From Hemiscyllium ocellatum (Eukaryota): 64,000 nt of DNA. A program made the translations under genes and the position numbers. The stretch spans positions 248,001 to 312,000 of the forward strand of contig NW_026867476.1 of the NCBI RefSeq assembly GCF_020745735.1, read 5' to 3'. The notes under the pieces are model-generated. The model did not search any database. It was not told the origin of the DNA and saw only the letters and a program-made list of their open reading frames with translations. Below are positions 31,737-31,896 of this stretch, one piece after another; the first letter of the stretch is position 1, and each line of letters begins with the position of its first letter.

Positions 31737-31775
31737 CACTATGATCCAAATCACGGAGAGAACTGTACAAAAACG
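31737..31775 (+). other. 23-RSS no. 1 of supporting V
   Basis: CACTATG + 23 nt + ACAAAAACG. Confidence 0.9.
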
Positions 31776-31796
31776 TAACCAGACTAACGATTAGGA

Positions 31797-31835
31797 CACA
31801 GTGACACAGAGCACAGACAGAGCTGTACAAAAACC
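31797..31835 (+). other. 23-RSS no. 2 (perfect consensus), tandem duplicate
   Basis: CACAGTG + 23 nt + ACAAAAACC, 60 bp after RSS 1. Confidence 0.95.
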
Positions 31836-31857
31836 TGAACGTCCTGACGATTGCAGC

Positions 31858-31896
31858 AACAGCAATGCAGAGAACAGAGACAGCTATACAAACAAA
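31858..31896 (+). other. Decayed third RSS unit
   Basis: AACAGCA + 23 nt (17/23 identical to spacer 2) + ACAAACAAA; lacks the CAC, so presumably non-functional. Confidence 0.7.

What the first reader, a model, noticed from the sequence alone, without database searches (positions are those of the whole stretch)
31737..31896. Tandem triple RSS array behind the supporting V: a possible built-in second chance for V(D)J recombination
Seen: three homologous units with 60/61-bp period. Unit 1 is CACTATG-23-ACAAAAACG, unit 2 is a perfect CACAGTG-23-ACAAAAACC, unit 3 is AACAGCA-23-ACAAACAAA. Spacers share 16/23 and 17/23 nt, and the linkers share t.a.c...ct.acgatt. Known: RAG needs the CAC and prefers consensus RSSs, and NAR-TCR needs two separate productive V(D)J junctions in one chain. 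Inference: the perfect RSS 2 may be used first. Because RSS 1 survives upstream of that joint, a failed join could be replaced by a second rearrangement from RSS 1 to a further downstream 12-RSS D/J. I am not aware of this arrangement being described for supporting V segments, but cannot check the literature.
Basis: partly seen in the sequence, partly recalled or inferred. Interest (0 to 1): 0.9.

Follow-up and report, generated by a model that had tools for sequence, protein, structure and literature searches.

The report
Tandem recombination signals behind shark V
A shark T-cell-receptor V segment is followed by three tandem copies of its recombination signal, and similar stacks of 2 to 17 copies follow related V segments in many sharks, so this is an old, family-wide feature whose purpose is untested.

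Summary
Three head-to-tail units of 60-61 bp (23-RSS plus a ~22-nt linker) start directly after a leaderless NAR-TCR supporting V-delta exon (31427-31736). U1 has CACTATG, U2 is a perfect consensus RSS and U3 is dead. The array is not an assembly artefact. A contig from another sample spans it, and Hemiscyllium ocellatum and Chiloscyllium plagiosum orthologues carry the same three units.

The same unit is repeated behind supporting Vs in whale shark (3 units), basking shark (3), cloudy catshark (17), a C. plagiosum paralogue (4-5) and an unidentified shark (5). It is truncated in horn shark, decayed in sawfish and absent in one sevengill cassette. It follows none of about 24 conventional or NAR V segments. 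Other readers of this scan noted such arrays elsewhere in this genome.

RNA contigs from a close relative show V(D)J junctions only at the RSS1 border. A cut at RSS2 would leave an in-frame TAG, and RSS1 would stay inside the joint. The "second chance" geometry is therefore sound, but use of RSS2 is untested. Whole units, linker included, are 90-95% identical across shark orders while the flanks are unalignable, which hints at function. Distal motifs are not significantly better kept than spacers. I found no description in the searchable literature.

The parts
24947..24989 (+). NAR-TCR leader exon (context)
   Evidence: ATG, hydrophobic leader, then a gt donor. It matches the N-terminus of gene models P0001 and P0002.
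25121..25408 (+). NAR-TCR V exon (context)
   Evidence: ORF ending YYCKAWYRDS. It is homologous to the NAR V part of P0001 and P0002.
25409..25447 (+). Single 23-RSS of the NAR V (CACAGTG-23-CCAAAAAAC)
   Evidence: RSS scan. No second unit follows it.
25791..25833 (+). Candidate NAR D (25791-25805) with its 3' 12-RSS (25806-25833)
   Evidence: CACGGTG-12-ACAAATATC. A CATTGTG heptamer lies directly 5' of the 15-nt D. This is read from the sequence only.
26144..26236 (+). NAR J: its 23-RSS (26144-26182, heptamer next to J) and J exon 26183-26236, followed by a gtaagt donor
   Evidence: The J tail (GSGTMVTVTA) appears spliced onto 31427 in RNA contigs of runs X19 and X20.
31427..31736 (+). Leaderless NAR-TCR supporting V-delta exon (splice acceptor ag at 31425-31426; extra Cys in CDR1, GFCQY)
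   Evidence: RNA coverage runs only from 31426 to about 31743 and carries the NAR-J splice. The family features are as described in PMC1845163.
31737..31775 (+). RSS1 (U1): CACTATG-23-ACAAAAACG, the signal used for expressed chains
   Evidence: RNA contigs match V up to 31733-31736 and then continue into D/J-like sequence, one ending in a PLIFG-type J motif.
31776..31796 (+). Linker 1 (21 nt). In the V frame it holds a TAG at 31792-31794, 2 nt before RSS2
   Evidence: stop at offset 55 from the heptamer start.
31797..31835 (+). RSS2 (U2): perfect consensus CACAGTG-23-ACAAAAACC, a spare signal whose use is untested
   Evidence: The heptamer is intact in all three hemiscylliid species. The nonamer is identical in H. 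ocellatum and is ACCAAAACC in C. plagiosum.
31836..31857 (+). Linker 2 (22 nt)
   Evidence: Homologous to linker 1.
31858..31918 (+). U3: a decayed unit (AACAGCA-23-ACAAACAAA plus a linker remnant); CAC is lost, so it is presumed dead
   Evidence: z=5.5 against U2. The same decayed form is present in both other hemiscylliid species.

Best explanation
This is one member of an old, family-specific multi-RSS cassette. The repeated unit is a 23-RSS plus a ~22-nt linker, and it sits directly behind NAR-TCR supporting V-delta segments of elasmobranchs. Here the cassette has three units.

Shown: the units are true duplicates. The array is real and shared by orthologues. The same unit is repeated 2-17 times behind supporting Vs of other shark orders and behind no other V type. 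Expressed chains are joined at the proximal signal, RSS1.

Follows from the known RAG mechanism: a cut at the intact distal RSS2 would give a joint of the form V-RSS1-linker-D/J. That joint is non-productive because of the in-frame TAG, but it still carries a complete 23-RSS. It could therefore recombine again with any remaining downstream 12-RSS (a further D, or a J by direct V-J joining, which 12/23 allows in TCR delta).

Inferred: the extra signals are kept because they give RAG more entry sites on a V that has no promoter or leader of its own and must rearrange on the same chromosome as its NAR partner. Distal cuts would then be recoverable detours, not losses. The RSS2 joint is never the intended product, and the benefit is capture plus recoverability, not a large number of retries.
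For: Duplicates. Real array: a contig from another sample spans it, and the H. ocellatum and C. plagiosum orthologues have the same three units. Family-wide: C. plagiosum paralogue 4-5 units, Rhincodon 3, Cetorhinus 3 perfect, S. torazame 17, unidentified shark 5, Heterodontus 1 plus a truncated second, Pristis 3 (the distal two decayed). TRF confirms periods of 61-62. Gene-model tails that translate through arrays add Stegostoma, Pristiophorus and more Hemiscyllium and Rhincodon copies. Specific to this V type: 0 of about 24 conventional or NAR V segments in the same 297 kb have a second unit (Fisher P about 8e-6), and the unit occurs nowhere else in that sequence. RSS1 use: RNA contigs end or switch to D/J sequence at 31733-31736, and RNA depth is zero beyond 31744. 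cDNA-like proteins P0051 and P0056 go from the V end straight to J and C. Constraint: whole units are 90-95% identical and linkers alone 83-92% identical between Heterodontus, Cetorhinus, Scyliorhinus and Rhincodon. The V exon is 85-88% identical and the flanks only 63-71%, i.e. unalignable. Intact consensus distal signals persist in old, diverged arrays: the window's U2, L005 unit 4 and Rhincodon unit 3.
Against: No joint, signal joint or transcript using RSS2 was seen, although contigs drop rare forms. Distal heptamer and nonamer positions diverge less than spacer and linker in 5 of 5 arrays, but not significantly (column permutation p=0.15-0.22). Many distal units are dead: U3 here, L005 unit 3, Rhincodon unit 2 and the Pristis distal units. 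Terminal units are often the most decayed, as in neutral minisatellites. Copy number varies from 1 to 17, and one Heptranchias cassette has no array. Among the three hemiscylliid species, RSS1, RSS2 and the flanks all differ by about 10%, so there is no power to detect constraint at that depth. Very large arrays cannot serve as retries, because 12-RSS partners are few.
Confidence: 0.45

Rival explanations
1. Neutral RSS minisatellite. A 61-bp tandem duplication arose in the ancestral supporting V. It has since expanded, contracted and been re-seeded by unequal exchange and conversion among the many cassettes. Only the proximal RSS is under selection. The distal copies are excised with it and have no role, or are mildly harmful decoys.
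For: Copy number is highly variable, from 1 to 17. Arrays are homogeneous within a species, as expected from concerted evolution: 94-98% in S. torazame and Cetorhinus. Terminal units are decayed and dead distal units exist. There is no significant excess conservation of distal heptamers and nonamers. Distal use gives an in-frame stop in every array examined. Only RSS1-type junctions are seen in RNA.
Against: It does not explain why the 22-nt linker beyond the nonamer is 83-92% identical across shark orders when intron and downstream flanks are unalignable. It does not explain why strongly competing consensus decoys would be tolerated in nearly every lineage for so long. It does not explain why perfect consensus distal signals survive in arrays whose spacers and linkers have diverged 35-50% (L005).
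Confidence: 0.35
2. The array has a function other than retry. It could be an attenuator or timing device, in which decoy signals lower the rate of productive joining (compare weak V-beta RSSs). It could be a barrier that stops RAG scanning from reaching the NAR V-D-J signals upstream. Or the conserved linker could be a factor-binding or regulatory site repeated along with the RSS.
For: The linker is conserved without any known RSS role. The position between the D/J-delta side and the NAR cluster, and the single-RSS state of the NAR V itself, fit a barrier. RSS quality is reported to set V-beta recombination frequency (abstract of bioRxiv 10.1101/2020.01.20.913046).
Against: No direct evidence. 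The window's own linkers have diverged from the shark consensus (identity 0.43-0.77). Copy-number variation argues against a finely tuned dose.
Confidence: 0.12
3. Ultralong CDR3 switch. RSS2 is used productively. Trimming of 3 or more nt removes the TAG, so about 18 germline-encoded residues (YTMIQITERTVQKRNQT) extend CDR3.
For: The V frame stays open through U1 up to 31791 in the window and in both hemiscylliid orthologues.
Against: An 18-codon open stretch has about a 0.4 probability by chance. The three species are close relatives. In most other supporting Vs the frame stops at TGA inside heptamer 1. No RNA contig continues past 31744.
Confidence: 0.05
4. Assembly artefact (a collapsed or stuttered repeat).
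For: None, beyond the general risk with short tandem repeats.
Against: A contig from a different sample spans 31705-31959 with 3 differences. The same three units occur in two other species' assemblies. In a third related species the orthologous contig keeps the same length there, with 74 unlike letters in place of 72.
Confidence: 0.01

Closest known systems
Alternative or cryptic RSSs that leave germline RSS DNA in TCR coding joints (mouse TRBJ1-7 and TRBJ1-2; Mika et al. 2019, PMC6857471)
   Same: A second signal lies a few tens of bp from the canonical one, and its use leaves the canonical RSS inside the coding joint.
   Different: Those are single, dissimilar, low-scoring cryptic sites on J segments, and their use is rare. 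Here the extra signals are true tandem duplicates with consensus motifs. They number up to 17, lie behind one V family, and are conserved across orders.
VH replacement and secondary rearrangement at Ig-kappa and TCR-alpha (established knowledge, not tested here)
   Same: A signal that survives a first join lets a second recombination replace a failed product.
   Different: VH replacement uses a heptamer-only cryptic signal inside the V coding end of a different, resident V. Kappa and alpha editing use other V and J segments. Here the same V would retry from its own retained full 23-RSS.
Artificial competition substrates with two RSSs in tandem (established experimental design; recalled, not checked)
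   Same: Two or more same-type signals in the same orientation compete for one partner.
   Different: Those are engineered. This is a natural germline arrangement.
NAR-TCR doubly rearranging delta chain (Criscitiello et al. 2006, as summarised in PMC1845163 and PMC12227049)
   Same: NAR V-D-J lies upstream, and the supporting V-delta is leaderless with a CDR1 cysteine. All of this is seen here.
   Different: The accessible summaries do not mention multiple RSSs. The primary paper could not be read.
Minisatellites (10-100-bp tandem repeats evolving by unequal exchange)
   Same: Head-to-tail units, variable copy number, homogenisation within arrays and decayed edge units.
   Different: The repeated unit is itself a complete functional recombination signal, and the unit sequence is conserved across orders.

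Membership tests
Canonical 23-RSS | Heptamer starting CAC, 23±1-nt spacer, A-rich nonamer | tested here: met
   RSS1 scores 5/7 and 8/9; RSS2 scores 7/7 and 9/9; both spacers are 23 nt. U3 fails because CAC is lost.
Canonical 23-RSS | Heptamer abuts a usable coding end | tested here: met
   This holds for RSS1, which abuts the V exon end at 31736. It does not hold for RSS2, whose flank is RSS1 plus a linker with an in-frame TAG.
Canonical 23-RSS | Cut by RAG in lymphocytes (junctions at the heptamer border) | tested here: inconclusive
   RNA contigs of a closely related species show junctions at 31733-31736, which supports RSS1. Nothing is available for RSS2. There is no DNA from lymphoid tissue, and contigs drop rare forms.
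NAR-TCR supporting V-delta | No leader exon; splice acceptor in phase with the NAR J donor | tested here: met
   ag|AT at 31427. The J donor is in phase 1 at 26236. The spliced form is seen in RNA contigs of X19 and X20.
NAR-TCR supporting V-delta | Conserved extra cysteine in CDR1 | tested here: met
   GFCQY. The feature is as stated in PMC1845163.
NAR-TCR supporting V-delta | Lies downstream of a NAR V-D-J cluster | tested here: met
   The cluster is at 24947-26236, 5.2 kb upstream.
Minisatellite / tandem repeat | Head-to-tail homologous units with a constant period; copy number differs between lineages | tested here: met
   Period is 60-62 bp. There are 3 units here and 1.4 to 17 elsewhere.
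Built-in secondary-rearrangement device (works like VH replacement or receptor editing) | A signal is retained in the first joint | not testable with these tools
   This follows from the geometry if RSS2 is cut, but no such joint was observed.
Built-in secondary-rearrangement device (works like VH replacement or receptor editing) | The retained signal is used in a later recombination | not testable with these tools
   This needs lymphoid DNA: excision circles carrying linker-D/J coding joints.
Built-in secondary-rearrangement device (works like VH replacement or receptor editing) | Distal signals are kept by selection | tested here: inconclusive
   Heptamer and nonamer positions diverge less than spacer and linker in 5 of 5 arrays, but p=0.15-0.22. 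Whole-unit and linker conservation across orders is strong.

The most novel reading that the evidence does not exclude
The RSS ladder is a selected device. RAG reaches the most distal signal first, for instance when scanning from the D/J-delta side. It makes a disposable joint, and the V then retries from the next signal inward. This would give NAR-TCR supporting Vs a form of self-editing that no other antigen-receptor V is known to have. The conserved linker would serve as an optimised coding flank or spacer for the next signal.
Probability: 0.2. Interest if true: 0.85.

Novelty: new variant of a known kind. Interest (0 to 1): 0.68.

Why it matters
V segments are described as having one recombination signal. 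A V family that has carried 2-17 tandem, often consensus, signals across shark orders and into rays would be a natural competition-and-retry substrate for RAG. It bears on three questions: how RSS number and order set V usage, how a chain that needs two V(D)J events on one chromosome is assembled reliably, and whether editing from retained signals is older and more varied than the mammalian examples. It also matters for annotation. Current shark gene models translate straight through these arrays and so give false C-terminal tails.

Tried and rejected
- **TRF on the window:** it found nothing at the site, because the array is too short and diverged. The repeat finder and shuffle tests were used instead.
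- **Linkers as D segments:** rejected. There is no 12-RSS on either side, and by eye the reverse strand gives only a 4/9 nonamer after a 12-nt spacer.
- **The long V end (ALSRRSAY) as a recent germline V-D join explaining the odd layout:** rejected as a local event, because C-A-L-S-R-R-x-A is shared by supporting Vs of all species. An ancient join cannot be excluded.
- **Selection test on distal heptamers and nonamers versus spacers and linkers:** the trend exists but is not significant.
- **Three-species substitution counts in the hemiscylliid orthologues:** no power, since about 10% of sites differ everywhere.
- **Literature:** four full-text searches for tandem, multiple or second RSS and for NAR-TCR found no description. 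Criscitiello 2006 and Ott 2021 are not held, so prior mention cannot be excluded.
- **Scyliorhinus canicula locus:** no DNA was returned.
- **Chimaera:** no chimaera supporting V was recovered, so the age beyond elasmobranchs is open.

Full report
**What is there**

The window holds a complete NAR-TCR cassette. It comprises a leader exon (24947-24989), the NAR V exon (25121-25408) with one 23-RSS, a candidate 15-nt D with a 3' 12-RSS, and a J (26183-26236) with a 23-RSS and a gtaagt donor.

A V exon without a leader starts 5.2 kb downstream, directly after an ag acceptor at 31427, and runs to 31736. It carries the extra CDR1 cysteine (GFCQY) that marks NAR-TCR supporting V-delta segments (feature as stated in PMC1845163).

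RNA contigs from two runs of a closely related species (about 97% identical) carry the NAR-J tail fused exactly at 31427. They cover only the exon.

**The observation**

Directly after the exon come three units:
- U1, 31737-31796: CACTATG-23-ACAAAAACG plus a 21-nt linker.
- U2, 31797-31857: CACAGTG-23-ACAAAAACC plus a 22-nt linker.
- U3, 31858-31918: AACAGCA-23-ACAAACAAA plus a remnant.

U1 and U2 are 72% identical over 57 nt. Alignment scores stand at z=7.0 (U1/U2) and z=5.5 (U2/U3) against shuffles. With heptamer and nonamer left out, 27 of 40 spacer and linker positions match (P about 1e-6). These are therefore duplicates, not two unrelated signals.

A contig from a different sample of the same species spans 31705-31959 with three differences. 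The orthologous loci of Hemiscyllium ocellatum and Chiloscyllium plagiosum have the same three units, with U3 already dead in all three species. An assembly artefact is excluded.

**It is a family-wide feature**

Protein searches with the V exon returned shark gene models. Several of their C-terminal tails translate straight through RSS-like repeats. I fetched the DNA behind these models:

| Species (locus) | Units behind the supporting V |
|---|---|
| C. plagiosum paralogue (L005) | 4, plus 1 decayed |
| Rhincodon typus (L011) | 3 (unit 2 has lost CAC; unit 3 is intact) |
| Cetorhinus maximus (L007) | 3 perfect |
| Scyliorhinus torazame (L008) | 17 over 1 kb |
| Unidentified shark, in an ENA metagenome contig (L004) | 5 |
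| Heterodontus francisci (L006) | 1, plus a truncated second |
| Pristis pectinata, sawfish (L009) | 3, the distal two decayed |
| Heptranchias perlo (L010) | 1, with an unrelated spacer |

TRF independently reports periods of 61-62 with 2.8, 5.0 and 16.8 copies. Gene-model tails add Stegostoma, Pristiophorus and further Hemiscyllium and Rhincodon copies.

In the same 297 kb, about 24 conventional V and NAR V segments each have at most one signal. The unit occurs nowhere else on either strand (Fisher P about 8e-6). That association is partly shared ancestry, because supporting Vs form one subfamily.

Other first readers of this scan noted 4-5-unit arrays behind other supporting Vs elsewhere in this genome. 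I could not inspect those places. Contigs of the second sample do contain paralogous V ends followed directly by CACAGTG signals.

**Which signal is used**

In the RNA contigs the match to V ends at 31733-31736. It then either stops or continues into unrelated sequence. One continuation ends in a PLIFG-type J motif, the same motif as in the TCR-delta-like cDNA protein P0051. RNA depth is zero from 31744 onward.

P0051 and P0056 pass from the supporting-V end straight to J and C, with no RSS-derived residues between. Expressed chains are therefore made at the proximal signal, even though its heptamer departs from consensus at two positions.

Assembled contigs drop rare variants and the RNA comes from a relative. 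This result does not exclude RSS2 cutting.

**What a distal cut would give**

Read in the V frame, U1 is open until a TAG at 31792-31794, 2 nt before RSS2. In most other species the frame stops at TGA inside heptamer 1. A joint made at RSS2 is thus non-productive unless 3 or more nt are trimmed.

By the standard RAG mechanism such a joint retains RSS1 intact. However, the RSS2 joint would be a detour and not a first attempt. Arrays of 17 units cannot be explained by retries alone.

**Selection or drift**

For function:
- Whole units are 90-95% identical between Heterodontus, Cetorhinus, Scyliorhinus and Rhincodon, and 84% between sawfish and shark.
- The linker alone is 83-92% identical. The V exon is 85-88% identical, and intron and downstream flanks are at 63-71%, which is essentially unalignable. 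No known RSS requirement covers 22 nt beyond the nonamer. I have no explanation for this conservation.
- Intact consensus distal signals survive in arrays whose spacers and linkers have diverged 35-50% (L005; the window's U2).

For drift:
- Copy number varies widely.
- Arrays are homogenised within species.
- Edge units are often decayed.
- Several distal units are dead.
- Distal heptamer and nonamer positions diverge less than spacers and linkers in 5 of 5 arrays, but not significantly (p=0.15-0.22).

**Verdict**

The structural reading is well supported: an ancient multi-RSS cassette specific to supporting V-delta, with RSS1 as the working signal and RSS2 as an intact spare.

For the role, I favour extra RAG entry sites whose use is recoverable (0.45). 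The rivals are a neutral RSS minisatellite (0.35), another function such as attenuation, a barrier or a linker-binding factor (0.12), and an ultralong-CDR3 route (0.05).

**Comparison with what is known**

The nearest documented cases are the alternative RSSs of mouse TRBJ1-7 and TRBJ1-2, which leave germline RSS DNA in coding joints (PMC6857471). VH replacement and kappa/alpha editing are also close (established knowledge, not tested here).

Full-text searches found no description of tandem RSS arrays or of multiple signals on NAR-TCR supporting Vs. The primary NAR-TCR genomic papers are not in the library, so novelty is provisional.

Noticed in passing
window 24947-26236: A complete, apparently intact NAR-TCR L-V-D-J cluster. 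The layout is V(23-RSS), D(12-RSS on its 3' side, weak 5' signal), J(23-RSS). Each of these elements has a single signal.
   Followed up: partly
linkers in L004 573-594, L008 28007-28028, L009 about 13398-13412: The conserved linker contains a consensus-like 5' splice site. It reads G|GTGAGG in catshark and the unidentified shark, GTGGGG in horn, basking and whale shark, and CAG|GTGAGT in sawfish unit 2. It is absent from the window's own units. No RNA evidence for its use was seen.
   Followed up: no
window 31733/31797, as seen in run X1: One contig from the second sample joins the V end at 31733, through the letters TAG, to an RSS2-like CACAGTG signal. It is either a paralogous supporting V or an allele lacking U1; the short flank (44 nt) does not decide. 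A further contig ends ...GCG followed by CACAGTG and a hybrid-looking spacer.
   Followed up: no
window 4631-4909, 50312-50593, 57370-57670: Three conventional V-like exons with in-frame stops, each with at most one (often poor) RSS. They look like pseudogenes.
   Followed up: partly
L001 and L002 (H. ocellatum contig JAJGRY010000103.1, 61 kb apart): Two places encode the same 251-aa NAR-TCR gene model. Their tblastn hits and tandem-RSS coordinates are identical. This is either a recent segmental duplication or an assembly duplication.
   Followed up: no
L004 (ENA ERZ27276711, k141_5642): Shark genomic DNA is filed in a metagenome assembly. Its supporting V has TGA where the CDR1 cysteine codon should be, so this five-unit copy may be a pseudogene.
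   Followed up: no
gene models P0001, P0002, P0009, P0043, P0049, P0053, P0054, P0058-P0060, P0069: Automatic annotations of several shark and ray genomes read through the RSS arrays. This gives predicted NAR-TCR proteins false C-terminal tails such as TVIQSTERAVQKPE.
   Followed up: partly
supporting V ends in all loci (e.g. window 31711-31736): The supporting V coding end is unusually long and conserved after the Cys (A-L-S-R-R-x-A). This could reflect an ancient germline V-D join that left the D's 3' 23-RSS. It is not testable here.
   Followed up: no
L010 8960-11979 (Heptranchias perlo): A NAR V plus supporting V cassette whose supporting V has one RSS with an unrelated spacer and no array. 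This is either lineage-specific loss or a different V origin.
   Followed up: no
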